Notes: generated from the letters alone by a model not told the origin. A DNA stretch of 64,000 nucleotides from Octopus sinensis (GCF_006345805.1 NC_043024.1:4650001-4714000); one strand, 5' to 3'. Shown: positions 1-62,462, counted from the first letter of the stretch. Numbers and translations: made by a program.

Positions 1-2390
1 TTTTCAAAAATATTTCTCCTCTCACCAAAATATATGGATATTTTGCTTCTTTTTTCTTTTATAGTTTATTCCAAATAAATATCACTTCTCTTATATTTCT
101 TCTAAATGTGATCAATGCCAATATTTAAAAATGTCACAAATACTCTTTGTAAATCCATCAAAGTATATTTAAAAGAGAAAATTATCTCTTGCACATTTCA
201 GACACAGAAGTAAAGAAATGCTTTCTCTCTCTCAGAAGAAATATTTTACTGTAATTCAGCAATGTTTTATAGAAGAAGGATTATACGTTTGTAGAATATC
301 TTTGCAGTGTCTTTCAAACATGATACATATTGATGATTCTTTAAAAGCAAAAAATACTTTTTATCCAATTTCATGTGATTTTCTGAAAGAATAGAAAAAA
401 TAATAAAGACATTAAGTATGTTTAAAAGGCAGATATTCAAAAGTGCAAATTTACGACATTTCTGTTTTCATAAATTGTAGAAGTAATTCTTTATCTGAAC
501 TATTAAATTTATCCCATCTCTCTGTTTTGAAGAAGTTTATATCAGGGTGTAGACACATGTAGTATAATAACATCTATTGGACATTAAGTCTATCATAGAC
601 ACACACCAATATACATGTCAATAACACTAGATATCTGATGCTTTCATCTCAGTCATGTGTCGTAAAGGAGATATCACACCTCCTCTGCCTCTTTCCGTAC
701 ATTTATAAATATATAAATACACACATACAAGCAGCTTAATGTCAATATTCTGTGTTACATGAAACATGAATAAAAGTCAGGAAATAATCAGTATGGATGA
801 CTAACAGCATCAAAATCTTTTGTGGGGAATTTTTCATGTAGGAAAATTTATTGGTTGAGGTGGAGAAGGAAATTGGTGACAACCCTTCTCAATGGGGGCA
901 AATGATGTAGTTTTAACATTAAATTATGCTCGTTATTTTTAAATTCTTACACCTTACAATAAATGTTTCTTTTCCTTTTTACTTCGCAACGAAATATTGT
1001 TTATTGTGGTGAGTGAAAAACACAGAGACGCGTAATCACGGAGGTGTGAGTTCGAGTCTCATAGCCGGCCGCCAACACTTTTCTGCAAAATAGGGGTAGC
1101 TTATCCTGTTCAGGCTATATTATTAGCAATATCCTGCCTTTGAGAATTTAAAATCACTTCTTAAACTTCCTAAGACATCTCAAAGCTTCTAAAGCAAACT
1201 TCGTTTGTTTGTTTCCGTTCATCGTAATTTGAATTTAAATATATATGTATTACGAAGAGAGAAAAGGATAACTTAGGTAATTAATTGAAAATAACATAAA
1301 AACACAGAGTGCAATTCATATATAATGCCTTAAATCCCAACAACGGACCATTGAATGTGTTTATGTGAATAAAGATATTGAAAAACATTAGCACGTAAGA
1401 GTGAGAAAGAAACTCGGAAGGTATCAGGTGGTCGTGGGGTGCGCGATAAATAACAGCTAAACTGCTCTTCAATCGGTTTTTTCCCTTCTTTGTTGGTTTC
1501 ATAACCGTTTGAATCCTTGCATGTACAGCAGAAATACGCAGAAATTTTCTGAAAATTTCCCCAAAATAAAAATATGTGATAAGCGGTTATATTGGGTGCT
1601 TAAAGAAAGATTCCTTTGAAAAATAGATATTAATTGTAAGTTGTAATGATGGAGAAGAACCTTCGGAAATAAAGACTTCCTAGGTTTTAAATAAAATCCG
1701 TTCCATTTCTTGTATATACAAAATTTACTTTTCGTTTCAGTATTTCAAGTGCACACTCGTATTTTTATACATTCCGTATGTCTTAGAAATTACATCGTAA
1801 TTTTCCCGCGGAATTTACGTGTGAGGAAGAAAGAGAAAAGTTATCTACACAAGGTATCCATCTGACGTTAACAAATAATATAGGAAATAAGGAAAGATGC
1901 AATGAAATATCTGAATGTAAAGGAGAACACAACGAAAGTATTGAAAGAACAGCCTCACCGAAGTTGAAAAAGTGGGTTTCCATCGCAAAAAAATTAGGGA
2001 AAGGTAGGTGCGGTCCATGCCCTTTACCTCCGCTATTTCGTCTTTGTTTAGTGAGATTCTTTCTTGTAACTTACTCAACACATCGAAACAAACAGACGTA
2101 CGTAATATGATACATATACAATAGAAATATACTTACATAGTAATATATATTCAGAGAGAGTCAACGATGAAAATATGAGAATATGTTGAATGAGTGAAAA
2201 GTTAGAGTGGACAGTGACAGCTTCAAGAGAATTTTTACGACGAATATTAATATTTAACAGGTCAACATAATTAAAAAAATGCTGCATCTGTTTCTTTAGA
2301 CACTTAATTACCAATCATGTGTCTATTTAATTAGATTTTCTCTTAAATATCAGTTGTAAAGTGGAATTGAGCAAGCAATACACATGCATT
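1..2390 (-). other. 5' non-coding part (5'UTR, type II intron 383-2136, first exon) of a ZNF gene whose coding exon lies left of the window
   Basis: Homologous to 30790-33200 upstream of ZNF-C. Minus-strand acceptor TTCTTTCAG ends at 383 and donor GTAAGT is at 2136. The promoter motif is deleted near 2384. Confidence 0.7.
1005..1073 (+). repeat. degenerate tRNA-like / SINE-head remnant with intact T-arm and B-box
   Basis: GTGAG-TTCGAGT-CTCAT forms a T-arm at 1046-1062, followed by AGCCGGCCGCCA. The D and acceptor arms cannot be folded. Paralogs occur at ~31790, ~54340, ~58900 and ~63820. Confidence 0.55.
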
Positions 2391-2401
2391 GTCTTTCTAC
2401 T

Positions 2402-4156: not shown

Positions 4157-5974
4157 CTACCCCGTATGAATACGCTTGTGTTTAGTTAAGCTACTGTGTT
4201 GAGAGAAAGATTTACCACAGATATCACAGTGATAAGGTTTCTCCCCTGTATGAATACGTTTGTGCTGAGTTAAGCTATTGCCAGCAGAGAGTGATTTACC
4301 ACAGGGATAAGGTTTGTCCCCTCCATGAACCCGTTTGTGTTTCGTTAAGCTACTTTGAACAGAGAATGATTTACCACAGATACTACAGTCATATGGTTTC
4401 TCCCCTGTATGAATACGTATGTGCGTAGTTAGGGTAGTGTTTTGAGAAAATGATATACCACAGATATCACAGTGATATGGTTTCTCGCCTGTATGAACAC
4501 GTATATGTCGAGTTAAGTGACTGTCAACAGAGAATGATTTACCACAGATATCACAGTGATATGGTTCCTCCCCTGAATGAATACGTTTGTGCTTCGTTAA
4601 GCTACTTCCATCAGAGAAAGATTTACCACAGATATCACAGCAATATGGTTTCTCTCCAGTATGAATACGTTTGTGTTTCGTTAAGCTACCGCCAACAGAG
4701 AATGATTTACCACAGATATCACAGTAATATGGTTTGTCCCCTGTATGAATACGTTTGTGGTCTGTCAAGTGACTACTATCAGAGAATGATTTACCACAGA
4801 TATCACAGGTATATGGTTTCTCTCCTGTATGGATACGTTTGTGTTGAGTGAAGCCACCGCTATGAGAGAATGATTTACCACAGATATCACAGTGATATGG
4901 TTTCTCTCCTGTATGGATACGTATGTGCTTCGTTAAGCTACTTCCATCAGAGAAAGATTTACCACAGATATCACAGTGGTATTGTTTCTCTCCAGTATGA
5001 ATACGTTTGTGTTTCGTTAAGCTACCGCCAACAGAGAATGATTTACCACAGATATCACAGTGATATGGTTTCTCCCCTGTATGAATACGTTTGTGTTTAG
5101 CTAAGCTACTGTTCTCAGAGAATGATTTACCACAGATATCACAAGAATATGGTTTCTCCCCTGTATGAATATTTTTGTGTTGAGTTAAGACACTGTTCTG
5201 AGAGAATGATTTACCACAGATATCACAGGTATATGGTTTGTCTCCTGTATGAATACGTTTGTGTTTCGTTACGTTGCCATCAGAGAATGATTTACCACAG
5301 ATATCACAAGAATATAGTTTCTCTCCTGTATGGATATGTGTGTGTTTAGTTAAGTGACAGCCAGTAGTGAATGATTTACCACAGATATCACAGTGATATG
5401 GTTTCTCTCCTGTATGGATACGTGTGTGTTTAGTTAAGTGACTGCTAGTAGAGAATGATTTACCACAGATATCACAGTGATATGGTTTTTCGCCTGTATG
5501 AATACGATTGTGCTTAGTTAAGCTGCTGCTTTGAGAGAAAGATTTACTACAGATATAACAGTGATATGGTTTCTCCCCTGTATGAATGTGTTTGTGAGTT
5601 GTCAAGGTACTTCCTGAAGTGAAGGATTTACCACAGATATCACAATGATAAGGTTTCTCTCCTGTATGAACCCGTTTGTGTCGAGTTAAGTGACTGCCAT
5701 TAGAGAACGATTTACCACAGATATCACAGGTATATGGTTTCTCTCCTGTATGAACCCGTTTGTGTCGAGTTAAGTGACTGCCATTAGAGAATGATTTACC
5801 ACAGATATCACAGGTATATGGTTTCTCCCCTGTATGAATACGCTTGTGTCTAGTCAAGTTACCACTTTGATAGAATGATTTACCACAGATATCACAGTGA
5901 TATGGTGCTTCCCCTGCATGAATTTCTTGGTGTTTACTGGATTTACGTTTTTCTAAAAATGACATTTTGTACAT
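4157..5974 (-). CDS. C2H2 zinc-finger protein ZNF-A, 605 aa, 20 intact fingers plus 1 finger with a deletion
   Basis: Tandem CxxC-x12-Hx3H units with TGEKPY linkers. Finger 8 is one residue short and finger 20 lacks DIC. The ORF ends HTG* (GAG>TAG). No KRAB-like or other effector domain is seen. Confidence 0.95.
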
Positions 5975-7420: not shown

Positions 7421-8374
7421 TGGTCGTGAGATGTGCGAAAAATAACAGCTAAATAGCTCATAAATCACAGTTGATTTTTTTCTTTTTTTGGTTGCATGAC
7501 CGAACGAATTCTCGTACGCAAAAATTTCTGAAAATTCCCCCAAATAAAAATATGTGACGAGGGATTATATTAGGTGCTTAAAGCAGCACTCCACACACAC
7601 ACACAAAATTAAATAAATTAGAAAAACATATTAATTCTAACATTTAATGATGCAGAAGAACCACCAGAAATAAAGACTTCCTACGTCTCAAATAAAAGCC
7701 ATTTCCTCTCGATACGATATTTGCTTTTCGTTTCAGTATTTCAAGTGCACACTCGTATTTTTATAAAATCCCCATTTCTTACTAATTACATCGTAATTTT
7801 CCCATATTTAACGAAATTGTCGAATTTACACGTTAGAAAGAAAGATAAATGTTATCTAAACAAGGGATTGATCCGACGTTTTTACAAATAATTTAGAAAA
7901 TAACCAAAAGTGCAATGAAATGTCTAAAAGAAAACGACAACACAATGAAAGTATTAAAATGACAGCCTTTCGTATAATTTCGTCTTAGTGAGATTTTTTT
8001 TCCTTTTAACTTTCTCAACACATCGAAACAAATAAATGTACATAATACGACACATATATAATAGAAATGTTTAAATAAATACTTACATAGTAATAGATAT
8101 GGAGAGAAAGAGTGAAGGAGGAAGATGTGAGAACTGGAGTCAGAGTGGACAACGACAGCTTCAAGAGAATTTCTAGGTTTCTACAACAAACGTTAATTAA
8201 TATTTTTCAGGTCCACATAATCGTAAATGCTGTATCTGTTTGTTTAGACAGTTAATTACCAATCATTTGTATATATTTGATTGGGTTTTCTCTTAAATAT
8301 CAGTTTGAAAGTGAAAGTGATCAAACAATCAAGGTGCGTGAGGAACAAGAAATACACTTAATTAGGAAGACTCA

Positions 8375-8391
8375 ACAAGGGGAACTAACTC
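8375..8391 (-). promoter_or_regulatory. putative ZNF core-promoter motif GAGTTAGTTCCCCTTGT, the 3' target-site copy of LINE 1
   Basis: Lies at the 5' end of the predicted first exon of ZNF-A and directly abuts the LINE 3' end. The promoter function is inferred. Confidence 0.55.
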
Positions 8392-8649
8392 CATATTTCT
8401 TTATTATGATTATACAATCGTTACATAGAAGGACAAATACAGGACATACATGCAAAAAACAGTTAAGAGGTTCGATTAAAAATTTTCCATAACATTTGGA
8501 TTATTCATTATAAAAATTCGTCTGTAAATTGTCCTTTACATGACCAATAGAATATTATAACATTACATAAACTTTCGATCTTACCGAAGTTTTAAACCCC
8601 GGCAATTTATAAGGCCCCGCAGCTTTTGTTTCCTCTCCTCCCTCCATAG

Positions 8650-11600
8650 TTAAGCTGGGTTTCTGACACCCACCTTTTTTTCCACTTCCTTCCATCTTTT
8701 CTCATACACACCCCGTGGTAAGATCCTCTTTTCCAGCCCCATTTTGCTCTTCAGATGATATCTGAAGTAAGTGAGCAAGCCGGGGCCCGAGACAAAGGAT
8801 CCTATCGCGACTCCTTCCATTCTTGTACGCCACATGCATTCTTTTGCTACTGCAACCGTGCAGTAAAAACATGCCTCACCTTCCTTCGAGAGTCCAGTTG
8901 GCGGTATCATCTTAATCATAGACTCAGCCGACAGCTGTACTCGTCCCAGATGCGATAACACGTGTTCTGCGTAACTTATCAAGTCGGACAACTTCCGACA
9001 GTGTATAAAAGCGTGCTGGACGGTTTCATCGTCCAACTCGCACCTTGGACACGTCGGTGGCACTGAAATTCCGTGCCGCGATAACTTCTCGCGAACAGGT
9101 AAAGCATTCCTATAGCACTGCCAGGCCAGGGATCTTTGGAAATTATCCAAATACCCCGTCCTGAAAGTCTTTTTAAACAGGTTGGTAAGCTGGTCTTCGT
9201 CAAACCCCAGAGCCCCTCCTAGGACGTCGTCGTTCTTTGCCTCTACCAGCCTTCTATAAAATACCGAGGTGGTATTTCCGCAGCCGGCCTTGCCCGCCTT
9301 GTGGATCAGCGTGAGTGCCTGTCGGCACTCCTTTTGCCATAAAGTCAGTTTCCATCTTTTGATGCGACCGGGTTTAAAATTCACTAAGGAGGCCGGTCTC
9401 GGGAAAAATTCCCCTGCCAGCGGACTCCACACCTTATCACCCTCCAGGTGGTGCCAGAGATGCTTCAGCCTCAACGCATGTCTGCGCATCATCAATCAAG
9501 GCATTCCTAACCCACCCTTTAACGGTTCGTGGCAGCAAACGGAGCGCCTCACAAGTGGCTTTCCTCCCTTCCACAAAAAGCGGAAAAGGATTCGCTCCAA
9601 CTTGCTAAGCCATGAATCGGGGCAAGGGACAACGGTCAGGCGGTAAGTGATTACAGATGCAATGAACATCTGTACCACCTCCGCCCTTCCTTTCAAGGAC
9701 AGAAACCTTCAGGACCAGGTCCGTACTATGGCCTCCACCTTGCTCGTCACCTCACTCCAGTTCCTCTCCGTTTGGGAGTCTGGCCCAAACCAAACTCCTA
9801 GCAACTTAACAGGGCCATCCGTCCAGTGTCCCACGACACTGGACGATATCGACTTACTCCTCCAGGTGCCGAGGCGCAAGCCAACCGACTTCTCCTTGTT
9901 AACCTTTGCTCCTGCCACCGCCTCGTATCCTCTGATAGCCTCTTCCACTCAAGGTAGCTGGGCCTCATTGGACACGGTGAGGGTGACGTCATCCGCATAA
10001 GCAGTAACCGTCCTCCCACCTCCGATCTCATCCGAGTTACTTCCCAGCCTCTCCAACTTTCGCAGCAATGGCTCAAGAGCCAACACGTACAAAAGTGGTG
10101 ACAAGGGGCACCCTTGACGAACTGAACATTCGATCGAAAACGGTTCCGTTATGTAACCGTTTATCTGGACGGTGGACTTGATGCCGCTATACATAGCGGA
10201 GATCCACCCGCGAAATTCAGGGCCCAGTCCAGCCGCTTCGAAGACCGTCGCCAGGTACTCATGGTCTACCCTATCGAACGCTTTACTTTGGTCTAAATGG
10301 ACCATTACCCCGCCCTTGCCGGTTAATTTACCCACCCTATCTAAGGTGTAGCGTATAAGGTGAAGATTGTCCTGGATCGACCTGCCTGGAATTGCACATG
10401 TCTGTGCTCTCCCTACAAGTTTCTCCACGACAACCGTCAACCTTTTTGCCAACACCTTGGCCAAAATCTTTAACTCTACATTAAGTAGAGTTATGGGCCT
10501 GTAGTTACTAATGTTATCCCCCTTGCTCGGGTCTTTCTGGATTAGCGTCACCACTCCCCGGCTTACAGAACTGGGAATTCTCCCATTCTGCTGCCAGTTC
10601 GTGTAGACGCCTGCCAATATTCCCCCGAACAAGTCCGGCATACTTTGGTAAAACTCGTAGGGCAGACCATCCAACCCCGGCACATCCGGCCAGTATCCCC
10701 TCTATCTTCGCGGGAGTGATCGCTTCTTCACAGCACTCCACCTTACGCCCCGAGAGCCGCGGTCCGCCGGCTAGGAAGTCCTTTAAGGCCCTCGCCCGCT
10801 CCGGCACCACACCACCCCCGAACACGCGGGCGAAATGCTGGTGAAGAAACTTTTGCATCTCCTCCTGTCCATAGATCTTTTGTCCCTGTTCGTCAGTTAA
10901 AGACTTGATTGAGGCTTTGTTACCTCTCTGACTCTCCACTCGACGGGCCCATCCGGCAACGTTAATACCTTCTCGTTTCCCAGCGCGTAGCTTAGCTCTG
11001 ACTCTGCAACCTTCGTGTTTGGAGTTAAGGTGACGGTACAGTACCGTCCTTGCTGCCATCACTCCGGATGCAGAGCCAGCTTCCATTGCCTCGTTTAGAT
11101 TCTTAACTAAATCGTCCTCTATCCTATTCCTATCTAACCTTAGCTGATTGCTAATTCTAATGGACTTTGAACGGATGGCTCTTTTGAGGGAGTGCCACCA
11201 TCTACTGTTAATGATGGTGCCACACAATGCCCTCTGTACTAACACCTTAATCCGGGCACGGAAGTCTTCACAATTCAAAATAGCCTTGTTCAGCTTCCAG
11301 TACCCGGGTCCCTGTCTATGACACTTATCTAATTGCATCCTACACGTCACAAATTTGTGATCCGTGTAAGGCACAATGTGAAACTGTGGACAACTAAACG
11401 TATCCTTATCTCTTTTCTTAACGAATATCCTATTTAAATACGATCTGTGTGAGCCGTCGTTGTTACTCCACGTCCACTGTGGAACGCTCGGCTCATCCAG
11501 TCGGTAACGGTCCACTAGATCAAAGCTCTCTAGTAGACCCTTGAGGCTAGGGTCCCCCTTCCTATTGGTTGAGCCAACACTGTCGACCCGCGCTTCAAGG

Positions 11601-12025
11601 ACAGTGTTAAAGTCCCCTACTAAGACTACCGTTTTCGACGTCGCTAAAAAGGGCTCCAGGTTCCGAAAAAAACCCGTCTGCCTACACTCATTCGGAGCGT
11701 AGACAGCTACCAACCTGAAGGACTGTTACCTTACGTGGGTCACATCCAGAACAACCAGCCTGGCTTCTGGGTTCAGAAAGACAGTACTTACCTGCAAGTC
11801 CAAGCTCTTCCTGATAAGGACTGCCACGCCTCTGCCTCTTCCTCGGCTAGGAGAAATAAATTTCTGGAACCCATTTAGAAGAGGCGAGAACGCTTGGGCC
11901 TCGTTCATCTTGGACTCGGTTGCAATAGCTATGTCCACTCCATGTGTCGTGAGGTCGTTCAGGAAACAAATTTGTTTCCATTTCGACCCCATTCCACGTA
12001 CATTCACACAACCCAGCTTAGCCAT
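8650..12025 (-). pseudogene. LINE ORF2 (endonuclease / reverse transcriptase / zf-RVT), disrupted
   Basis: Motifs LGCVNVRG, VVLVGDFN, YTDHKFV, PGLDGLP, NYRPITLLN, DQSKAFDRV, RQGCPLSP, YADD and CPRC-x7-HAFIHC. In-frame stops near 11727, 9950, 9710 and 9497, and a frameshift near 10685. Confidence 0.92.
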
Positions 12026-12079
12026 TGTCGGTGAGAGAAAAAATAAATGAACTTACGGTTGAGAAAGGGGCATGACAGT

Positions 12080-13189
12080 TTAAATCTGCCCTCTTCCCCT
12101 TCTTCCTCCTTGTGGTCGTAGCTGCAGGGCTCTTAACTTTTTCAAATCTTGTTTTATGGGGAGGGGTTTGGCGAACTGTTTTCCAATGAATACAGTGCCG
12201 TGGGGGTAGGGCTGGGGAATTTGCTTTGTATGTATGTCTGCAGTGCTTGCTGATTTTTTCCTTGTTTGGGGAGGGGAGTCCAGGGTGTTATCTTTTTTTC
12301 TTTTGTGTGTCACCTGTGTGTAATCCATTTGTTCAATACAATCCTCCGTTTCGGTTTCTTTGCTTGTCGTCGTCTTGGGTTCTTTTTCCGCCTTCTCCCC
12401 TTCAGTGTTTGAAGCACTTTGGGGGGGAGCTTCGTTGGTTTTCTTTTTTTTTAAACAGTTCGAGCGGACGTGACCCTTTTCACCACATTTAAAGCACCTA
12501 GGTCTGCGCCCCTCCACTGACACTCTCATGGACGTTCCATCCTCATTAAATACCCTATCGGGCAGGTTCTCCAATATCTTGTTTTCTGCCTGAACGAGGA
12601 GTTCCAGCGTCTGTCCCTTCCAGCGTACCTCCTCTTTCCTTCTCATCTGCAGAATCGAAACTTCCCGCTCTACATTGTGCAGGACCGCCGCTGCTACCCA
12701 CATTATGTCATATCCTCTACCAGCAGTTTAGCTGTTCTTTTCCCCATATAGCAACATGATATCATTATTTTTCAGGGTCATTGATGACACCTCTCTTGCT
12801 ACCTCAGCCGAGTCAAAATGTGCTTCAACGGTAGCGCTGCGAGCACCTCGAACAACATGGCTAATTTTGTCCCACACCGGGGACAAGCACTTTTCTACTA
12901 TCCCGTTTTTGACATCCATGATTTTTTTTTCTTTGTAGCTATAAACTTTGTATATAACTGTCTTTTCCTTTATTTCCTGTACCTTCGCTTGCGGCGGTAC
13001 CAGTTTAATTTCATTGCCTTCCATTTTTACTAAGTTCCGAAATTCGAATAACTGTTCAATCTTAAATTCTACATCCGTTATGGTTCCGCCCACTGCGGCC
13101 GAAAAAGACTGTTTTTTGACTTCGGTATCCTTTGGTTCACCTTTTCCCATCACGGGAAAGTCACTCTTCGACGCCAAGTCGAAATCCAT
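12080..13189 (-). pseudogene. LINE ORF1 (gag-like, zinc knuckle), disrupted
   Basis: Contains the CFKCGEKGHVRSNC knuckle. Small deletions near 12710-12750 relative to copy 2 break the frame. Confidence 0.85.
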
Positions 13190-13425
13190 TTCTCAAAAAA
13201 TGTTTCAAAAATATTACCTCGAAGGTAATGACAATGATTAAACACAGAATTTTCTGCCCCGTAGGGCGAAAATTACTGTTACACAACGGACAACAGTTCA
13301 ATTCACGAGTAACAATTCACAAACAACGAAGAACAAAAATCGAACTCACTCAACAAAAGGCAGCAAAATTCTCAAAACGCAGATGAAAGAGGTGTACCGA
13401 GACAATGAGGAAGAATTAACTCTGA

Positions 13426-13442
13426 ACAAGGGGAACTAAGTC
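13426..13442 (-). promoter_or_regulatory. type II version of the motif (GACTTAGTTCCCCTTGT) at the LINE 1 5' flank
   Basis: The flank 13408-13460 matches the empty type II sites at 57530-57575 and 62453-62498. Confidence 0.6.
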
Positions 13443-13455
13443 TTGTCTTTATACT

Positions 13456-13838
13456 CTAGCGGTGTCATATGAAATTGTCGCCCATAATTATGACCCTAGT
13501 ATCGATCTATTGCATTTCAATCTGTTTTAGGTTTATGGTTGGGGGAAAGGGCATCTTTTTCTTCACAAATGTAAATAAACCCAATCTGTTTCTTAAACGA
13601 GGGACATATTCATACAGCACAGAATGTTTTTTTTTTACCTCAATGGACGTCATTGATTGATTGAAATTTCAGAAATTGAAGAAAAAACAACAGATATCTT
13701 ACAAAGTATAGAATTTTCTCAATAAAGCCAAGAAAAAAAGATGTTTTATAAACACATTCTACCAGTATACGAAGTTTAAAATTTTTTAGTTACCTAGAAA
13801 TTATGTTAAAAAAACTGCCGTTCAAACCGAAAAGATCC
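13456..13838. mobile_element. one-ended GGATCTTTTCGG-TIR MITE copy
   Basis: Same sequence and same truncation as 2402-2777. Confidence 0.75.
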
Positions 13839-14984: not shown

Positions 14985-15631
<647 letters not shown>

Positions 15632-15639
15632 CTTTTAAC

Positions 15640-18924: not shown

Positions 18925-18941
18925 GAGTTAGTTCCCCTTGT
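18925..18941 (+). promoter_or_regulatory. empty type I target / promoter motif GAGTTAGTTCCCCTTGT of ZNF-B
   Basis: Single uninterrupted copy at the position paralogous to the LINE-filled sites at 8391 and 48130. Confidence 0.65.
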
Positions 18942-19859
18942 CAACTCTTCCTAATTTTGTTCTACCTCCTGTTTCTCACGCACCTTCATTGTTTGATCAG
19001 TTCCACTTGACAACTGATATTTAAGAGAAAACCCAATCAAATATATACAAATGATTGGTAATTAACTGTCTAAACAAACAGATACAGCATTTACGATTAT
19101 GTGGACCTGAAAAATATTAATTAACGTTTGTTGTAGAAATCTAGAAATTCTCTTGAAGCTGTCCTTGTCCACTCTGACTCCAGTTCTCACATCTTCCTCC
19201 TTCACTCTTTCTCTCAATATCTATTACTATGTAAGTATTTATTTAAACATTTCTATTATATATGTGTCGTATTATGTACATTTATTTGTTTCGATGTGTT
19301 GAGAAAGTTAAAAGAAAAAAAATCTCACAAAAACGAAATTATACGAAAGGCTGTAATTTTAATACTTTCATTGTGTTGTCGTTTTCTTTTAGACATTTCA
19401 TTGCACTTTTGGTTATTTTCTAAATTATTTGTAAAAACGTCGGATCAATCCCTTGTTTAGATAACATTTATCTTTCTTTCTAACGTGTAAATTCGACGAT
19501 TTCGTTAAATGCGGGAAAATTACGATGTAATTAGTAAGAAATGGGGAATGTATAAAAATACGAGTGTGCACTTGAAATACTGAAACGAAAAGCAAATATC
19601 GTATCGAGAGGAAATGGAACGGCTTTTATTTGAGACATAGGAAGTCTTTATTTCTGGCGGTTCTTCTACATCATTAAAAATTAGAATTAATATATTTTTC
19701 TAATTTATTTAATTTTTCTCGTCACATATTTTTATTTGGGGGAATTTTCAGAAATTTTTGCGAACGAGAATTCGTTCGGTCATGCAAACAAAAAAAGAAA
19801 ACAATCAACTGTGATTTATGAGCTATTTAGCTGTTATTTTTCGCACATCTCACGACCAG

Positions 19860-22514: not shown

Positions 22515-23066
<552 letters not shown>

Positions 23067-42010: not shown

Positions 42011-43123
42011 CTACCCTGTATGAATACGTCTGTGTTGAGTTAAGCCACTGTTCTGAGAGAATGATTTACTACAAATATCACAGCGATATGGTTTCTCACC
42101 TGTATGAATACGTTTATGTTTAGTTAAGCTACTGCTTTCTGAGAATGATTTACCACAGATATCACAGGTATATGGTTTCTCGCCTGTATGAATACGCTTG
42201 TGATTAGTTAAGCTGCTGCTTTCTGAGAATGATTTACCACAGATATCACAGTGATATGGTTTCTCTTTGGTATGAATACGTTTGTGTTTCGTTAAGTTAC
42301 TGCCATTAGAGAATGATTTACCACAGATATCACAGTGGTATGGTTTCTCCCCTGTATGAATACGCGTGTGTTTGGTTAAGCTACTGCGAACAGAGAATGA
42401 TTCACCACAGATATCACAGCGATATGGTTTCTTGCCTGTATGAACACGTTTGTGTTTAGCTAAGCTGCTGCCAACAGAGAATGATCTTCCACAGACATCA
42501 TAGGTATATTGTTCCTCCCCTGTATGAATACATTTGTGTTGAGTTAAGCGACCGCCAACAGAGAATGATTCACCACAGATATCACAGCAATATGGTTTCT
42601 CCCCTGTATGAATACGTTTGTGTTTAGCTAAGCTGCTGCCAACAGAGAATGATCTTCCACAGATATCACAGGTATATGGTTTCTCACCTGTATGAATACG
42701 CTTGTGTTTAGTTAAGCTACTGCGAAGAGAGAATGATTTACCACAGATATCACAGTGATATGGTTTCTCCCCTGTATGAATACGTTTGTGTTTCGTTAAG
42801 TTACTGCCATTAGAGAATGATTCACCACAGGTATCACAATGATATGGTTTCTCCCCTGTATGAATACGTTTGTGTTTAGCTAAGCTGCTGCCAACAGAGA
42901 ATGATCTTCCACAGATATCACAGGTATATGGTTTCTCACCTGTATGAACACGTTTGTGAGTAGTTAAGCTACTGCGAACAGAGAATGATTTACCACAGAT
43001 ATCACATTTGTATGGTTGTTCCCCTGTATGAATATGTTTGTGTTGATTGAATTTACTTTCTTCTAAGAATGACTCTTTGCAGATGTCACAGTCATATGAT
43101 GATTTTCTTAATTCTTCCGACAT
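42011..43123 (-). CDS. C2H2 zinc-finger protein ZNF-E, 370 aa, 12 intact fingers plus 1 Cys>Tyr finger
   Basis: [10 protein letters not shown] head, ends HTG*. Predicted intron 43552-47818. Confidence 0.93.
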
Positions 43124-47150: not shown

Positions 47151-48130
47151 CTGGTCGTGAGATGTGCGAAAAATAACAGCTAAATAGCTCATAAATCACA
47201 GTTGATAGTTTTCTTTTTTGGTTGCATGACCAAACGAATTCTCGTACGCAAAAATTTCTGAAAATTCCCCCAAATAAAAATATGTGACGAGGGATTATAT
47301 TAGGTGCTTAAAGCAGCACTCCACACACACAAAAATTAAATAAATTAGAAAAACCTATTAATTCTAACTTTTAATGATGCAGAAGAACCACCGGAAATAA
47401 AGACTTCTTACGTCTCAAATAAAAGCCGTTCCATTTTCTCTCGATACGATATTTACTTTTCGTTTCAGTATTTCAAGTGCACACTCGTATTTTTATACAT
47501 TCCCCATTTCTTACTAATTACATCGTAATTTTCCCGCATTTAACGAAATCGTCGAATTTACACGTTAGAAAGAAAGATAAATGTTATCTAAACAAGGGAT
47601 TGATCCGACGTTTTTACAAATAATTTAGAAAATAACCAAAAGTGCAACGAAATGTCTAAAGGAAAACGACAACACAATGAAAGTATTAAAATGACAGCCT
47701 TTCGTATAATTTCGTCTTAGTGAGATTTTTTTTTCTTTTAACTTTCTCAACACATCGAAACAAATAAATGTACATAATACGACACATATATAATAGAAAT
47801 GTTTAAATAAATACTTACATAGTAATAGATATGGAGAGAAAGAGTGAAGGAGGAAGATGTGAGAACTGGAGTCAGAGTGGACAACGACAGCTTCAAGAGA
47901 ATTTCTAGATTTCTACAACAAACGTTAATTAATATTTTTCAGGTCCACGTAATCGTAAATGCTGTATCTGTTTGTTTAGACAGTTAATTACCAATCATTT
48001 GTATATATTTGATTGGGTTTTCCTCTTAAATATCAGTCGTAAAGTGGAACTGATCAAACAATCAAGGTGCGTGAGAAACAGGAGCAAGAATTAAAGGGAA
48101 TTACGAAGCGTTAACAAGGGGAACTAACTC

Positions 48131-51100
48131 CATATTTCTTTATTATGATTATACAATCGTTACATAGAAGGACAAATACAGGACATACATGCAAAAAACA
48201 GTTAAGAGGTTCGATTAAAAATTTTCCATAACATTTGGATTATTCATTATAAAAATTCGTCTGTAAATTGTCCTTTACATGACCAATAGAATATTATAAC
48301 ATTACATAAACTTTCGATCTTACCGAAGTTTTAAACCCGGCAATTTATAAGGCCCCGCAGCTTTTGTTTCCTCTCCTCCCTCCATAGTTAAGCTGGGTTT
48401 CTGACACCCACCTTTTTTTCCACTTCCTTCCATCTTTTCTCATACACACCCCGTGGTAAGATCCTCTTTTCCAGCCCCATTTTGCTCTTCAGATGATATC
48501 TGAAGTAAGTGAGCAAGCCGGGGCCCGAGACAAAGGATCCTATCGCGACTCCTTCCATTCTTGTTCGCCACATGCATTCTTTTACTACTGCAACCGTGCA
48601 GTGAAAACATGCCTCACCTTCCTTCGAGAGTCCAGTTGGCGGTATCATCTAATCATAGACTCAGCCGACAGCTGTACTCGTCCCAGATGCGATAACACGT
48701 GTTCTGCGTAACTTATCAAGTCGGACAACTTCCGACAGTGTACAAAAGCGTGCTGGACGGTTTCATCGTCCAACTCGCACCTTGGACACGTCGGTGGCAC
48801 TGAAATTCCGTGCCGCGATAACTTCTCGCGAACAGGTAAAGCATTCCTATAGCACTGCCAGGCCAGGGATCTTTGGAAATTATCCAAGTACCCCGTCCTG
48901 AAAGTCTTTTTAAACAGGTTGGTAAGCTGGTCTTCGTCAAACCCCAGAGCCCCTCCTAGGACGTCGTCGTTCTTTGCCTCTACCAGCCTTCTATAAAACC
49001 GAGGTGGTATTTCCGCAGCCGGCCTTGCCCGCCTTGTGGATCAGCGTGAGTGCCTGTCGGCACTCCTTTTGCCATAAAGTCAGTTTCCATCTTTTGATGC
49101 GACCGGGTTTAAAATTCACTAAGGAGGCCGGTCTCGGGCAAAAATTCCCCTGCCAGCGGACTCCACACCTTATCACCCTCCAGGTGGTGCCAGAGATGCT
49201 TCAGCCTCAACGCATGTCTGCGCATCATCAACCAAGGCATTCCTAACCCACCCTTTAACGGTTCCTGGCAGCAAACGGAGCGTCTCACAAGTGGCTTTCC
49301 TCCCTTCCACAAAAAGCGGAAAAGGATTCGCTCCAACTTGCTAAGCCATGAATCGGGGCAAGGGACAACGGTCAGGCGGTAAGTGATTACAGATGCAATG
49401 AACATCTGTACCACCTCCACCCTTCCTTTCAAGGACAGAAACCTTCCGGACCAGGTCCGTACTATGGCCTCCACCTTGCTCGTCACCTCACTCCAGTTCC
49501 TCTCCGTTTGGGAGTCTGGCCCAAACCAAACTCCTAGCAACTTAACAGGGCCATCCGTCCAGTGTCCCACGACACTGGACGATATCGACTTGCTCCTCCA
49601 GGTGCCGAGGCGCAAGCCAACCGACTTGTCCTTGTTAACCTTTGCTCCTGCCACCGCCTCTTCCACACAAGGTAGCTGGGCCTCATTGGACACGATGAGG
49701 GTGACGTCATCCGCATAAGCAGTAACCGTCCTCCCACCTCCGATCTCATCCGAGTTACTTCCCAGCCTCTCCAACTTTCGCAGCAATGGCTCAAGAGCCA
49801 ACACGTACAAAAGTGGTGACAAGGGGCACCCTTGACGAACTGAACATTCGATCGAAAACGGTTCCATTAGGTAACCGTTTATCTGGACGGTGGACTTGAT
49901 GCCGCTATACATAGCGGAGATCCACCCGCGAAATTCAGGGCCCAGTCCAGCCGCTTCGAGGACCGTCGCCAGGTACTCATGGTCTACCCTATCGAACGCT
50001 TTACTTTGGTCTAAATGGACCATTACCCCGCCCTTGCCGGTTAATTTACCCACCCTATCTAAGGTGTAGCGTATAAGGTGAAAATTGTCCTGGATCGACC
50101 TGCCTGGAATTGCACATGTCTGTGCTCTCCCTACAAGTTTCTCCACGACAACCGTCAACCTTTTTGCCAACACCTTGGCCAAAATCTTTAGCTCTACATT
50201 AAGTAGAGTTATGGGCCTGTAGTTACTAATGTTATCCCCCTTGCTCGGGTCTTTCTGGATTAGCGTCACCACTCCCCGGCTTACGGAACTGGGAATTCTC
50301 CCATTCTGCTGCCAGTTCGTGTAGACGCCTGCCAATATTCCCCCGAACAAGTCCGGCATACTTTGGTAAAACTCGTAGGGCAGACCATCCAACCCCGGCG
50401 CATCCGGCCAGTATCCCCTCTATCTCCGCGGGAGTGATCGCTTCTTCACAGCACTCCACCTCACGCCCCGAGAGCCGCGGTCCGCCGGCCAGGAAGTCCT
50501 TTAAGGTCCTCCCCCGCTCCGGCGCCACACCACCCCCGAACACGCGGGCGAAATGCTGGTGAAGAAACTTTTGCATCTCCTCCTGTCCATAGATCTTTTG
50601 TCCCTGTTCGTCAGTTAAAGACTTGATTGAGGCTTTGTTACCTCTCTGACTCTCCACTCGACGGGCCCATCCGGAGTTCCAGCGTCTGTCCCTTCCAGCG
50701 TACCTCCTCTTTCCTTCTCATCTGCAGAATCGAAATTTCCCGCTCTACATTGTGCAGGACCGCCGCTGCTACCCACATTATATCATACCACTCGGTATGT
50801 CCTCTAACCAGCAGTTTGCTGTTCTTTTTCCCATATACGAGGGTAGCAGCATGATATCATCATTTTTCAGGGTCAATGATGACACCTCTCTTGCTACCTC
50901 AGCCGAGTCAAAATGTGCTTCAACAGTAGCGCTGCGAGCACCTCGAACGACATGGCGAATTTTGTCCCACACCGGGGACAAGCACTTTTCGACCATTTCG
51001 TTTCTGACGTCCATAATTTTCTTTTCTTTGTAGCTATACACTTTGTATATAACTGTTTTTTCCTTTATTTCTTGTACCTTCGCTTGCGGCGGTACAAGTT

Positions 51101-51485
51101 TGATTTCGTTTCCTTCCATTTTCACCAAGTTCCTAAATTCGAACAGTTGTTCGATCTTGAATTCAACGTCCATCATGGTTCCGCCTACCGCGGCCGAAAA
51201 AGACTGTTTTGTTACTTCAGTGTCCTTTAATTCACCTTTTCCCATTGCGGGAAAATCATTCTTCGACGCCAAGTCGAAATCCATTTCTCAAAAATGTTTC
51301 AAAAATTACCTCGAAGGTAATAACAATTTTAAACACAGAATTTTCTGCCCCGTAGGGCGAAAATTACCGTTACACAACGGGCACTGTTCAATTAACAATT
51401 GACACAAACAACGATGAACAAAAAATCGAACTCTCTCAACAAAAGGCAGCAAATTTCTCAAAACGCAGATGAAAGGGGTACAACC
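48131..51485 (-). mobile_element. Tx1/L1-clade LINE copy 2 with internal ~1.64-kb deletion
   Basis: The RT and zf-RVT region is nearly identical to copy 1. The junction at 50674/50675 joins copy-1 equivalents 10956 and 12600. The identical 17-mer ACAAGGGGAACTAACTC flanks both ends (48114-48130 and 51504-51520). The 5' boundary is approximate. Confidence 0.92.
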
Positions 51486-52049
51486 AAATTAGGAATAGTT
51501 TTGACAAGGGGAACTAACTCTAGACTTTAAATAATTTCGGCTCTACTTTATATTTTATTTATTTTTATTTTATTTAGTTTCAGCTCACAAGCTGTGGCCA
51601 TGCTGGGGCACCGCCATTTATATATAATTCATATTTTTTTAAAGCGTTTCTTTGAAAATTCTTCCTCATAAATCACAATTATTGTCGGTACCACTTACAC
51701 AAAGATGGCACCGACATTTTATGCACAATTTTATACACGCAGCTCTCATAAGATAAATATTCACTCTTATTTTTCCATTTTGACCATAAACAGATGAAAT
51801 TACATTTTGAAATTGAAATGCTCAAATTTTTCTTCTAGAAAACAAAAATTGTATAGTAAAATATAGGAGTCACAATTTCATGTGAGTAAAAAATTAAAGG
51901 AACATGGTATACACTGAAAACCGTATCATTGGTAACTTATAAGCCAAGGTGATGGGTCAGAGCCAATACACATTTCAATTTGTAGGTGATACAAAAATTT
52001 ATTTCAATGAAAGGACAAAACCGTTTTCACTATGCACTCACCACCATAT

Positions 52050-55375: not shown

Positions 55376-55950
<575 letters not shown>

Positions 55951-57526: not shown

Positions 57527-57539
57527 AGTAGAAAGACAA

Positions 57540-57556
57540 GACTTAGTTCCCCTTGT
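57540..57556 (+). promoter_or_regulatory. empty type II motif GACTTAGTTCCCCTTGT of ZNF-G
   Basis: Precedes the first exon, with donor at 57844 and acceptor at 59474. Confidence 0.6.
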
Positions 57557-59943
57557 TCAGAGTTAATTCTTCCTAATTTTGTTGCTCCGTATGCATGTGT
57601 ATTGCTTGCTCAGTTCCCCTTTACAACTGATATTTAAGAGAAAATCTAATTAAATAGACACGTGATTGGTAATTAATTGTCTAAAGAAACAGATGCAGCA
57701 TTTTTTTTATTCTGTTGACCCTTTAAATATTAATATTCGTCGTAAAAATTCTCTTGAAGCTGTTACTGTCCACTCTAACTTTTCACTCATTCAACATATT
57801 CTCATATTTTCATCGTTGACTCTCTCTGAATATATATTACTATGTAAGTATATTTCTATTGTATGTGTATCATATTACGTACGTCTGTTTGTTTCGATGT
57901 GTTGAGTAAGTTACAAGAAAGAATCTCACTAAACAAAGACGAAATAGCGGAGGTAAAGGGCATGGACCGCACCTACCTTTCGCTAATTTTTTTGCGATGG
58001 AAACCCACTTTTTCAACTTCGGAGAGGCTGTTCTTTCAATACTTTCGTTGTGTTCTCCTTTACATTCAGATATTTCATTGCATCTTTCCTTATTTCCTAT
58101 ATTATTTGTTAACGTCCGATGGATACCTTGTGTAGGTAACTTTTCTCTTTCTTCGTCACGTGTAAATTCCGCGGGAAAATTACGATGTAATTTGTAAGAC
58201 ATGCGGAATGTATAAAAATACGAGTGTGCACTTGAAATACTGAAACGAAAAGTAAATTTTGTATACAGAAGAAATGGAATGGATTTTATTTAAAACCTAG
58301 GAAGTCTTTATTTCCGAAGGTTCTTCTCCATCATTACAAATTACAATTAATATCTATTTTTCAAAGGAATCTTTCTTTAAGCACCCAATGTAACCGCTTA
58401 TCACATTTTTATTTTGGGGGAATTTTCAGAAAATTTCTGCGTATTTCTGCTGTACATGCAAGGATTCAAACGGTTATGAAACCAACAAAGAAGGGGAAAA
58501 ACCGATTGAAGAGCAGTTTAGCTGTTATTTATCGCGCACCCCACGACCACCTGATACCTTCCGAGTTTCTTTCTCACTCTTACGTGCTAATGTTTTTCAA
58601 TATCTTTTTTCACATAAAAACATTGAATGGTCCGTTGTTGAGATTTAAGGCATTATATATGAATTGCACTTTTTGTTTTTATGCTATTTTCAATTAATTG
58701 CCTAAGTTATCCTTTTCTCTCATCGTAATACATATATATTTAAATTCAAATTACGATGGACGTAAACAAACAAACGAAGTTTGCTTTAGAAGCTTTTGAG
58801 ATGTCTTAGGAAGTTTAAGAAATGATTTTAAATTCTCAAAGGCAGGATATTGCTAATGATATAGCCTGAACAGGATAAGCTACCCCTATTTTGCAGAAAA
58901 GTGTTGGCGGCCGGCTATGAGACTCGAACTCACACCTCCGTGATTACGCATCATTTGCCCCCATTGAGAAGGATTGTCACCAATTTCCTTCTCCACCTCA
59001 ACCAATAATTTTTCCTACGTCAAAAATTCCCCACAAAACATTTTGATGCTGTTAGTCATCCATACTGATTATTTGCTGACTTTTATTCATGTTTCATGTA
59101 ACACAGAATATTGACATTAAGCTGCCTGTATGTATGTATTTATATATTTATAAATGTACGGAAAGAGGCAGAGGAGGTGTGATATCTCTTTTACGACACA
59201 TGACTGAGATGAAAACATCAGATATCTAGTGTTATTGACATGTATATTGGTATGTGTCTATGACAGACTTAATGTCCAGGAGATGTTATTATACTACATG
59301 TGTCTACACCCTGATATAAACCTATTGAAAATAGAGAGATAGGATGAATTTAATAGTTCAGATAAAGAATTACTTCTACAATTTATGAAAACAGAAATGT
59401 CGTAAATTTGTACTTTTGAATATCTGCCTTTTAAACATACTTGATGTCTTATATTATTTTTTCTATTCTTTCAGGAAATCACATGAAATTGGCTAAAAAG
59501 TATTTTTTGCTTTTAAAGAATCATCAATATGTATCATGTTTGAAAGACTCTGCAAAGATATTCTACAAACGTATAATCCTGCTTCTATAAAACATTGCTG
59601 AATTACAGTAAAATATTTCCTCTGAGGGAGAAAGCATTTCTTTACTTCTGTGTCTGAAATGTGCAAGAGATAATTTTCTCTTTTAAATATACTTTGATAG
59701 ATTTCCAAACAGTATTTGCAACATTTTTAAATATTGGCATTGATCACGTTTACAAGAAATACAAGAGAAGCGATATTTGTTTGGAATAAACTATAAAAGC
59801 AAAAAGAAGAAAAATATCCATATATTTTGGTGAGAGAAGAAATATTATTAAAAAGTTGTTGATCTGTACAACTTGAAGGATCGATTTTATTTGTTCTTGA
59901 AGAAATATCGGAGGAATATGGACAATCATCATATGACTGTGGC

Positions 59944-62449: not shown

Positions 62450-62462
62450 AGTAGAAAGACAA

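What the first reader, a model, noticed from the sequence alone, without database searches (positions are those of the whole stretch)
8360..13445. Candidate sequence-specific Tx1-like retrotransposon that targets, and regenerates, the promoter motif of C2H2-ZNF genes
Seen in the sequence: both LINE copies (8392-13407 and 48131-~51485) lie on the same strand as, and immediately 5' of, the predicted first exon of a ZNF gene (A and E). Each is bracketed by ACAAGGGGAACTAA(C/G)TC, and looser similarity (AATTAGGAAG...) extends the duplication to about 30 bp. Empty single-copy sites exist at 18925, 57540 and 62463. Established: Tx1-clade LINEs are often target-specific (Tx1L in another transposon, Keno in U2 snRNA, Mutsu in 5S rRNA, Dewa/Kibi in tRNA spacers) and can make long TSDs. 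Inference: this family uses a multicopy Pol II gene-family promoter as its safe-haven target. The upstream motif copy would drive the element and the TSD copy would restore the host gene; A and E both retain intact ORFs. I know of no described LINE targeting ZNF promoters. It would invert the usual picture of ZNFs silencing TEs.
Basis: partly seen in the sequence, partly recalled or inferred. Interest (0 to 1): 0.92.

Follow-up and report, generated by a model that had tools for sequence, protein, structure and literature searches.

The report
Promoter-homing LINE in octopus zinc-finger genes
Two dead copies of an L1/Tx1-type jumping gene sit at exactly the same spot, just after the likely transcription start of tandem zinc-finger genes in an octopus-like genome. 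Their 5' parts come from two separately evolving lineages, so the element probably homes to this gene-family promoter, a kind of target not described before.

Summary
ACAAGGGGAACTAASTC occurs 7 times exactly (0.01 expected). It brackets two minus-strand LINE copies, 8392-13394 and 48131-51476, each directly upstream of a same-strand C2H2-ZNF gene.

The element has an ORF1 with a CCHC knuckle, an APE endonuclease, an RT and a zf-RVT domain. Its closest solved structure is human L1 ORF2p. It has no poly(A) tail.

The duplicated host segment is about 44-52 bp: the 17-mer plus 27-35 nt. It lies between a TATA-like box and a conserved splice donor about 110 nt downstream.

- **3' junctions are not independent.** The LINE 3' part and its flank are about 99% identical, share a 14-nt disabling deletion and differ in a neutral pattern.
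- **5' parts are independent.** The first 147 ORF1 codons differ with dS 0.49 and dN/dS 0.075 (p 5e-13), which marks two active lineages. One abuts a B-type promoter copy and the other an A-type copy, at the same position.
- **A possible endonuclease footprint.** One paralog has lost exactly the 52-bp segment.

A site- and orientation-specific LINE is therefore the best explanation (about 0.68). Three things remain untested: promoter use, genome-wide specificity, and Tx1 versus L1 placement. The "TSD" halves are only 60-65% alike beyond the 17-mer. An Octopus sinensis relative sits at an unrelated site.

The parts
8392..13394 (-). LINE copy 1. It is a recombinant: the 5' ~550 bp come from lineage alpha and the rest from the same dead copy as LINE2. 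It is broken by several frameshifts.
   Evidence: ORFs and Pfam hits: zf-CCHC 12080-12703, Exo_endo_phos 10514-11713, RVT_1 9949-10683, zf-RVT 8650-9495. Ends were fixed by comparison with LINE2 and with the O. sinensis relative.
13395..13442 (-). Upstream (5') copy of the host target segment at LINE1. It is B-type: GACTTAGTTCCCCTTGT plus 31 nt.
   Evidence: It is contiguous with 1.8 kb of B-type flank that is 94-95% identical to 55780-57574 and 60692-62497. After the 17-mer it matches unit G at 29/35 positions.
8342..8391 (-). Downstream (3') copy of the target segment at LINE1. It is followed by exon 1 of ZNF A, with the donor GATTG|GTAATTAA at 8252-8264.
48131..51476 (-). LINE copy 2 (lineage beta). 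It has a 1.6-kb internal deletion.
51477..51520 (-). Upstream copy of the target segment at LINE2. It is the A/U type.
   Evidence: After the 17-mer it matches the empty site at 18925 at 21/25 positions. The ~26 nt upstream are also U-like.
48081..48130 (-). Downstream copy of the target segment at LINE2. It is the E/X type and is followed by exon 1 of ZNF E.
18925..18966 (+). Empty target site. It is the promoter-proximal segment of ZNF B, whose array is at 22575-23057.
57540..57591 (+). Empty B-type 52-bp target segment at the 5' end of ZNF G.
62463..62514 (+). Empty B-type 52-bp target segment of the next unit (H).
2381..2398 (-). Unit Z. It is 97% identical to G and H but lacks exactly the 52-bp segment. 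The junction reads AGAAAGACAA|TGCATGTG.
   Evidence: The deletion ends coincide with the LINE 3' junction and with the LINE1 5' junction.
12749..13189 (-). ORF1 N-terminal 147 codons of LINE1. Compared with 50844-51284 of LINE2, this region shows purifying selection.
   Evidence: 45 differences, split 7/7/31 by codon position. dS 0.485, dN 0.037, dN/dS 0.075, p 5e-13.
4157..5974 (-). ZNF A zinc-finger exon. Its frame is open, with 20 fingers.
42011..43123 (-). ZNF E zinc-finger exon. Its frame is open, with 12 fingers.

Best explanation
This is a non-LTR retrotransposon of the L1/Tx1 superclade with ORF1-CCHC, an APE endonuclease, an RT, a zf-RVT domain and no poly(A) tail. It integrates in one orientation at one position in the first ~50 bp of a tandemly amplified C2H2-ZNF gene unit. 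That stretch holds the conserved 17-mer GASTTAGTTCCCCTTGT and the next 27-35 nt. It lies just downstream of a TATA-like box and about 110 nt upstream of a conserved splice donor.

Shown here:
- There are two copies at the homologous nucleotide and in the same orientation.
- Their 5' parts belong to two lineages, alpha and beta, that diverged while ORF1 was under selection.
- Alpha abuts a B-type promoter copy and beta abuts an A-type copy.
- From about 12850 to the 3' end, and on into about 540 bp of flank, the two copies are one dead copy shared through recombination or gene conversion.

Inferred:
- The endonuclease nicks the bottom strand at ...AACTAASTC^T.
- It nicks the top strand 44-52 bp downstream.
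- The host segment therefore ends up on both sides of the element.
- The upstream copy, with its TATA-like box and a TCA initiator-like site at the end of the 17-mer, can transcribe the element.
- The downstream copy keeps the 17-mer and the start region for the ZNF gene.
- The LINE's terminal AATAAAG lies where the TATA-like box was.
- LINE copies in a tandem array then recombine, which explains why each copy now joins flanks of different paralog types.
For: - The motif occurs 7 times against 0.01 expected.
- LINE domains are present. The best PDB match is human L1 ORF2p at 6e-41, against R2 at 1e-21.
- The 3' end ...ATAATAAAGAAA is conserved in relatives from O. sinensis, Argonauta and a metagenome contig, so the motif is host sequence and not the element's tail.
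- The 5' ends of both copies start at the same LINE nucleotide and join the target segment at equivalent positions.
- ORF1 N-terminus: dS 0.485, dN/dS 0.075, differences 7/7/31 by codon position, p 5e-13.
- By contrast the RT block has 15 differences, 4 synonymous and 11 non-synonymous, and a shared 14-nt deletion.
- The LINE1 upstream flank and its target copy are B-type, 94-95% over 1.8 kb and 29/35 after the motif. The LINE2 upstream copy is U-type at 21/25.
- Unit Z has lost exactly the 52-bp segment.
- No other fragment of the family lies elsewhere in the 64 kb.
- Nine units share the donor GATTG|GTAATTAA about 110 nt after the motif. A TATA-like box lies 4-11 nt before the motif in every context.
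Against: - There are only two copies in a single 64-kb window, and the 3' junctions are one event.
- The two halves of each 'TSD' are only 60-65% identical after the 17-mer. The duplication is therefore inferred from position and not from sequence identity.
- The 5' UTR differs by only 6.7% against pS 0.36. It must either be constrained or the 5' part of LINE1 is a mosaic.
- An ectopic conversion of ORF1 plus a separate rearrangement at the 5' junction could mimic two insertions.
- The closest relative found, in O. sinensis (82% aa in ORF2), lies at an unrelated sequence with a perfect 18-bp TSD and no ZNF nearby. The Argonauta relative has no motif within 10 kb.
- There are no transcript data, so the promoter and TSS assignments rest on sequence features only.
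Confidence: 0.68

Rival explanations
1. There was a single chance insertion of a non-specific LINE upstream of one ZNF gene. Tandem duplication of the unit copied it. Later gene conversion and rearrangement produced the different 5' parts and flanks.
For: The LINE 3' part and its downstream flank are about 99% identical between the copies. They share a 14-nt deletion and differ in a neutral pattern. The cluster is visibly rearranged, with palindromes, head-to-head junctions and truncated units. The O. sinensis relative is at an unrelated site.
Against: ORF1 differences show dN/dS 0.075, which in-place decay of one insertion cannot produce. This rival needs an ectopic conversion from a second active lineage. 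It also needs an independent breakpoint exactly at the junction between target segment and LINE, to put a complete B-type segment and 1.8 kb of B-type flank in front of LINE1. The upstream flanks share no homology that could support such a conversion.
Confidence: 0.15
2. The element is site-specific, but the target is not a functional promoter. It would be a conserved repeat-unit boundary, or a sequence derived from another mobile element, that happens to lie 2.4 kb upstream of the ZNF exon. Tx1 elements are known to target other transposons or satellites in this way.
For: Known Tx1 families target DNA transposons, LTR elements, satellites and small RNA genes (PMC4494074). No transcript evidence is available. 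The ATG near the donor is not conserved among units. Homology between units begins only about 11-26 nt upstream of the motif.
Against: Every ZNF array in the window carries this 5' region in the same orientation. A TATA-like box, a 17-mer conserved at 16-17/17 amid about 70% flank identity, a TCA initiator-like site and a conserved GT donor sit at promoter-like spacing. No Rfam family or tRNA matches the site.
Confidence: 0.12
3. The 17-mer plus about 30 nt belongs to the element as short terminal direct repeats, or as the 3' tail of a tandem partial copy. The 'empty' sites would then be solo remnants, and unit Z would be the true empty site.
For: Unit Z lacks exactly the 52 bp. A distant relative forms head-to-tail tandems.
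Against: The 3' ends of the relatives stop at AATAAAGAAA and are followed by other sequences. Z is nested among B-type units that all carry the segment, with G and H at 97% and C and F as outgroup, so its absence is a derived loss. The 5' copies match the local paralog type rather than each other.
Confidence: 0.05

Closest known systems
Site-specific Tx1-clade LINEs: Tx1L (in the Tx1D transposon), Keno (U2 snRNA genes), Mutsu (5S rRNA genes), Kibi and Koshi (microsatellites), Tx1-Mar (Mariner-N4)
   Same: It has an APE endonuclease, an RT and a C-terminal Cys/His domain, and its ORF1 carries a CCHC knuckle. Insertion is orientation- and position-specific, into a multicopy sequence. Relatives differ in target (PMC4494074).
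   Different: The target here is the start-proximal segment of a protein-coding Pol II gene family. It is not an RNA gene, a microsatellite or another transposon. The duplicated host segment is long, at 44-52 bp. Placement in Tx1 rather than L1 could not be tested.
[quoted passage not shown]
   Same: Different subfamilies of one LINE family each sit in a different sequence variant of a paralogous target. Here alpha sits in the GACTTAG (B-type) variant and beta in the GAGTTAG (A-type) variant.
   Different: Here the pattern rests on a single copy of each lineage. Co-specialisation is a suggestion and not a finding.
CRE-clade elements SLACS, CZAR and CRE1/2 in trypanosomatid spliced-leader RNA genes
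   Same: They insert at a fixed position a few nucleotides into a Pol II-transcribed multicopy gene and make TSDs (PMC3636483 and PMC12278014). From my own recollection, they rely on the target's promoter and have a TSD of about 49 bp.
   Different: They use a restriction-like endonuclease and belong to a different clade. Their target is a small non-coding RNA gene. No TSS data exist for the present case.
R2 and R1 in 28S rDNA, and R9 in rotifer rDNA
   Same: They are site-specific, are co-transcribed with the target, and use target-derived RNA ends to form precise junctions. R9 makes an exceptionally long TSD (cited in PMC3636483).
   Different: The target is Pol I rDNA. R2 and R9 are RLE-type elements.
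Relative in Octopus sinensis (CM016868.1, locus L046 9747-15272)
   Same: It is 82% aa and 83% nt identical in ORF2. It has the same 3' end ...ATAATAAAGAAA without a poly(A) tail and the same ORF layout.
   Different: It has a perfect 18-bp TSD, TTTCATCGCTACCTGGTG, in an unrelated repeat-rich site with no ZNF gene and no 17-mer. The window copies carry a 12-17-nt leader, C(A)CC(T)CTTTCATCTGCG, that resembles that target.

Membership tests
L1/Tx1 superclade non-LTR retrotransposon | APE-type endonuclease placed N-terminal to the RT | tested here: met
   Pfam Exo_endo_phos on 10514-11713 and RVT_1 on 9949-10683.
L1/Tx1 superclade non-LTR retrotransposon | RT closest to L1-type ORF2p, with a C-terminal Cys/His (zf-RVT) domain | tested here: met
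   Human L1 ORF2p scores 6e-41 against R2 at 1e-21. zf-RVT scores 2.6e-10 on 8650-9495.
Tx1 clade (as opposed to L1 proper) | Type I ORF1 (RRM and/or CCHC knuckle) instead of Transposase_22 | tested here: met
   zf-CCHC was found in 12080-12703 and no Transposase_22 hit was found. PMC5203782 calls this 'consistent with the Tx1 clade' in non-mammalian animals.
Tx1 clade (as opposed to L1 proper) | RT phylogeny places the element inside Tx1 | not testable with these tools
   No Tx1 reference sequences could be obtained. There are no named hits among the homologs, and the Mutsu paper has no supplementary files held as text.
Sequence-specific LINE | Independent insertions at the same nucleotide and in the same orientation of a target | tested here: met
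   Two 5' junctions at equivalent positions belong to lineages with dN/dS 0.075 and sit in two promoter subtypes. This is n = 2 only. The 3' junctions are one event.
Sequence-specific LINE | A large share of all genomic copies flanked by the same target (the >20% criterion of PMC4494074) | not testable with these tools
   The source genome is not in any searchable collection. Within the window, 2 of 2 copies are at the target.
Sequence-specific LINE | Empty target sites exist, and the motif is host sequence rather than element sequence | tested here: met
   Empty sites lie at 18925, 57540 and 62463, each with unrelated upstream sequence. The relatives' 3' ends stop before the motif.
Sequence-specific LINE | The endonuclease cleaves the target sequence specifically | not testable with these tools
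   This needs an in vitro assay. The only indirect hint is the exact 52-bp loss in unit Z.
Target-promoter-dependent LINEs (R2-like or SLACS-like way of life) | The element is transcribed from the target's promoter | not testable with these tools
   Only sequence features are available: a TATA-like box 4-11 nt before the 17-mer and TCA at its end. No 5' ribozyme or stable structure was found.
Target-promoter-dependent LINEs (R2-like or SLACS-like way of life) | A clean target-site duplication of defined length | tested here: inconclusive
   The host segment is present on both sides over 44-52 bp. The halves are only 60-65% identical after the 17-mer and belong to different paralog types.

The most novel reading that the evidence does not exclude
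A LINE family has made the core promoter and first ~50 transcribed-region bp of an expanding C2H2-ZNF gene family its safe haven. Subfamilies would be matched to promoter subtypes: alpha to GACTTAG and beta to GAGTTAG. The element would use the host TATA box and start site for its own transcription. It would leave endonuclease scars, namely the exact 52-bp loss in unit Z and the 8-bp loss in the motif of units C and F. Through LINE-LINE recombination it would drive the shuffling, duplication and loss of ZNF units in the cluster.
Probability: 0.35. Interest if true: 0.85.

Novelty: new variant of a known kind. Interest (0 to 1): 0.68.

Why it matters
The known targets of site-specific LINEs are rRNA, snRNA, 5S, tRNA and spliced-leader genes, microsatellites, telomeres and other transposons. 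I found no description of one that homes to the start region of a protein-coding Pol II gene family.

If it holds genome-wide, three things follow. It adds a new class of 'safe haven'. It links a transposon physically to the promoters of the gene family usually thought to police transposons. It also offers a concrete mechanism, 5-kb direct repeats planted at the same place in many tandem units, for the fast turnover of cephalopod ZNF clusters. A 17-mer-specific APE endonuclease would also interest work on targeted integration.

Tried and rejected
1. A protein search with ZNF A, meant to find cephalopod ZNF loci, was swamped by long vertebrate ZNFs and gave nothing usable.
2. Exact look-ups of window ZNF proteins A, E and G found none on record.
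3. A metagenome scan for the 17-mer gave 41 hits. None resembles the window, so they are chance matches.
4. A viral-contig scan with the RT, and a genome-contig scan with the 3' junction, found nothing.
5. Rfam and tRNA scans of the window and of an empty site found no small RNA gene at the target.
6. I looked for a 5' ribozyme or structure. There was no Rfam hit, and the fold z-score was -0.65.
7. I considered a programmed frameshift between EN and RT, because the O. sinensis copy also changes frame there. This is rejected. The window copies share a 14-nt deletion, O. sinensis has its own 1-nt deletion, and Argonauta is continuous.
8. I considered that tandem ZNF units were made by LINE 3' transduction ending at the motif. 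This is rejected. The 11 nt TATAAAGACAA travels with the downstream promoter in unrelated upstream contexts.
9. I considered that the 17-mer is the LINE's own tail. This is rejected (the empty sites).
10. A Tx1-versus-L1 phylogeny was not possible because no reference sequences were available.


Full report
**1.

ACAAGGGGAACTAASTC occurs seven times without mismatch: 8375+, 13426+, 18925-, 48114+, 51504+, 57540-, 62463-. Shuffles of the window give 0.01 expected. Read in the sense of the genes, the motif is GASTTAGTTCCCCTTGT.

Two LINE copies lie on the minus strand between motif pairs. LINE1 is 8392-13394. LINE2 is 48131-51476 and lacks the stretch equivalent to 10956-12598. No other fragment of the family is in the window.

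**2. What the element is**

Pfam finds the following:

| Domain | Coordinates |
|---|---|
| zf-CCHC knuckle in ORF1 | 12080-12703 |
| Exo_endo_phos | 10514-11713 |
| RVT_1 | 9949-10683 |
| zf-RVT | 8650-9495 |

- The closest solved structure is human L1 ORF2p at 6e-41. R2 proteins score 1e-21.
- ORF1 gives no Transposase_22 hit. A CCHC-type ORF1 in an animal L1-like element is described as consistent with the Tx1 clade (PMC5203782).
- I could not run an RT phylogeny against Tx1 references. "Tx1-like" therefore remains plausible but untested.
- Both copies are dead. LINE1 has several frameshifts and LINE2 has a 1.6-kb deletion.

**3. Host and relatives**

- The best RT hits are cephalopod sequences: Argonauta hians at 61%, and metagenome contigs at 64%.
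- An ORF1 search found a single protein, an Octopus sinensis "gene".
- Its locus L046 holds a full-length relative that is 82% aa and 83% nt identical in ORF2. The window therefore comes from an octopodid.
- All relatives end in ...AATAAAGAAA(T/A) and have no poly(A) tail. What follows differs:
  - (ATT)n in the metagenome contig;
  - AT-rich sequence in Argonauta;
  - a perfect 18-bp TSD, TTTCATCGCTACCTGGTG, in O. sinensis.
- The 3' end of the window element is therefore ...ATAATAAAGAAATATG, and the 17-mer that follows is host sequence.
- None of these relatives lies at the 17-mer or next to a ZNF gene.

**4. The target in its gene context**

The window holds eight ZNF arrays plus truncated units. 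Each unit has this layout:

- a TATA-like box (TATAAAG, TAGAAAG or TATTTAAAG) 4-11 nt before the motif;
- the 17-mer, ending in CTTGT(T)CA, which looks like an initiator;
- a conserved donor GATTG|GTAATTAA about 110-130 nt after the motif start, present in nine units;
- about 2.4 kb of intron-like sequence;
- the zinc-finger exon;
- about 1.6 kb of 3' region.

G and H repeat with a period of 4923 bp. Homology between unit types starts only 11-26 nt upstream of the motif. Across unit types that are about 70% identical in this region, the 17-mer is 16-17/17 conserved. No Rfam family or tRNA matches the site. A core-promoter and start-site role is the natural reading, but no transcript data were available.

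**5. Anatomy of the insertion**

- In sense orientation the order is: upstream flank, TATA-like box, target segment, LINE, target segment, rest of exon 1.
- The segment present on both sides is 48 nt (13395-13442) and 50 nt (8342-8391) at LINE1. At LINE2 it is 44 nt (51477-51520) and 50 nt (48081-48130).
- Both LINE copies begin at the same nucleotide, C(A)CC(T)CTTTCATCTGCG TTTTGAG.... They join the target at equivalent positions.
- The TATA-like box is not duplicated. In front of the downstream copy, the LINE's own ATAATAAAG sits at nearly the same distance.
- After the 17-mer, the two halves are only 17/26 identical at LINE1 and 15/25 at LINE2.
- Each upstream half matches a different empty paralog. 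LINE1 matches G at 29/35. LINE2 matches the site at 18925 at 21/25.
- This is therefore not a fresh, clean TSD.

**6. One insertion or more?**

The 3' side is one event.

- From about 12850 to the LINE 3' end, and on to about 7850 in the flank, the two loci are about 99% identical.
- The 15 differences in the RT block are split 5/3/7 over codon positions, with 4 synonymous and 11 non-synonymous.
- Both copies share a 14-nt deletion that removes the EKSPG codons at the start of the RT. The O. sinensis and Argonauta relatives keep those codons.

The 5' side is different.

- In the first 147 ORF1 codons there are 45 differences, split 7/7/31 over codon positions.
- That gives 32.5 synonymous and 12.5 non-synonymous differences, dS 0.485, dN 0.037 and dN/dS 0.075, with binomial p 5e-13.
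- Such a pattern arises only while ORF1 is under selection. The two 5' parts therefore come from two lineages (alpha in LINE1, beta in LINE2) that diverged as active elements.
- The alpha part is directly preceded by a complete B-type target segment and 1.8 kb of B-type flank, 94-95% identical to the F-G and G-H spacers.
- The beta part is preceded by an A/U-type segment and unrelated flank.

The simplest history has three steps: an alpha insertion into a B-type promoter, a beta insertion into an A-type promoter, and later recombination or conversion between the LINE copies. The rival history is a single insertion. It needs an ectopic conversion from a second lineage, plus a separate breakpoint exactly at the junction between target and LINE.

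If the element were not site-specific, two independent hits at the same nucleotide of a ~50-bp segment in a 64-kb window would be expected with a probability of order 1e-7. That figure is my own rough estimate.

**7. A possible footprint**

- Unit Z (minus strand, junction at 2389/2390) is 97% identical to G and H but lacks exactly the 52 bp GACTTAG...CTCCGTA.
- Its left end coincides with the LINE 3' junction. Its right end coincides with the LINE1 5' junction.
- Units C and F, the outgroup, carry the segment, so this is a derived loss.
- Two staggered nicks 52 bp apart, followed by trimming and end joining, would give this result. This is inference.
- C and F share an 8-bp loss inside the motif (33194-33221 and 52996-53023).

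**8. Points that do not fit neatly**

- Inside the 99% block, the ~80 nt after the motif (the rest of exon 1) differ by about 28% between A and E. A is the outlier, and E resembles unit X. A short conversion tract from an unseen paralog is the simplest guess.
- The 5' UTR differs by only 6.7% against pS 0.36. It is either constrained or younger than the ORF1 segment.
- The 12-17 nt between the target segment and the start of the LINE proper, as defined by the O. sinensis copy, resemble the O. sinensis target (CCTTCAC|TTTCATCGC). This may be a leader carried over from an earlier target.

**9. Comparison with what is known**

- In architecture and behaviour, the element matches the site-specific Tx1-type LINEs. 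Their known targets are RNA genes, microsatellites, satellites and other transposons (PMC4494074).
- Mutsu subfamilies matched to 5S gene types are a close parallel to the alpha/B and beta/A pairing (PMC5340908).
- In way of life, the nearest analogues are elements that sit just inside a transcribed multicopy gene. These include the CRE-clade elements in spliced-leader genes, which also make TSDs, and R2 and R1.
- Searches of the held literature gave no LINE that targets the promoter of a protein-coding gene family, and none linked to cephalopod ZNF genes.

**10. Verdict**

A site- and orientation-specific L1/Tx1-type LINE in the 5' end of ZNF gene units is the best explanation, at about 0.68. 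It rests on two lineages in one window.

Several claims remain open:

- promoter use;
- regeneration of the host promoter;
- a defined TSD;
- Tx1 membership;
- genome-wide specificity.

It is a new variant of a known kind, and a genome-wide census would settle it quickly.

Noticed in passing
window 44211-46824 (ORF 44344-45753, + strand): A 2.6-kb insertion in the intron-like 5' region of ZNF E carries an ORF with RVT_1 plus a PHD finger. It is a second, unrelated retroelement, antisense to the gene.
   Followed up: partly
window 2381-2398 (unit Z, minus strand): There is an exact 52-bp loss of the LINE target segment in a unit that is 97% identical to G and H. The ends coincide with the LINE junction positions. 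It may be an endonuclease footprint.
   Followed up: yes
window 33194-33221 (-) and 52996-53023 (+): Units C and F share an 8-bp deletion inside the 17-mer, GA[CTTAGTTC]CACTTGT. They belong to a 640-bp head-to-head junction that is present twice at 96% identity (32859-33499 and 52718-53358).
   Followed up: partly
window 8254-8374 versus 47990-48113: The rest of exon 1, right after the 17-mer, differs by about 28% between ZNF A and ZNF E. It lies inside a block that is otherwise about 99% identical. A carries the unusual version. This is unexplained.
   Followed up: partly
window 15634-16443: This is a near-palindromic head-to-head pair of truncated ZNF 5' regions (units X and Y) without the motif. 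It lies next to a 2-finger ZNF fragment at 15075-15221.
   Followed up: no
window 13190-13394 versus 51285-51476: The LINE 5' UTR differs by only 6.7% between the two lineages, while synonymous sites of the adjacent ORF1 differ by 36%. The UTR seems constrained. No Rfam hit or stable fold was found.
   Followed up: partly
window 13503-13598, 15233-15329 (inverted), 2449-2547, 25776-25873, 39820-39914, 57384-57479, 62307-62402: A ~98-bp repeat occurs in both orientations and contains a short telomere-like CCCTAACCCTAACCCT stretch. It is part of the B-type ZNF 3' region but also occurs elsewhere.
   Followed up: no
L046 10001-33599 (Octopus sinensis CM016868.1): The NCBI gene model LOC115216432 (527 aa) is mostly the ORF1 of a LINE, stretched over a 23.6-kb 'gene' that overlaps a carboxylesterase gene on the other strand. 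It is probably a mis-annotation. The LINE itself has a perfect 18-bp TSD and a single 1-nt frameshift in ORF2.
   Followed up: partly
L045 348-12180 (ENA ERZ26052130 ctg11195c): A distant relative (49% aa) forms head-to-tail tandem copies with a period of 7547 bp.
   Followed up: no
L002 2010-2105 and L001 12280-12330: Relatives at 61-64% aa end in ...AATAAAAGAAATC(ATT)n, or in AT-rich repeat sequence. This suggests microsatellite-associated insertion in sister families.
   Followed up: no
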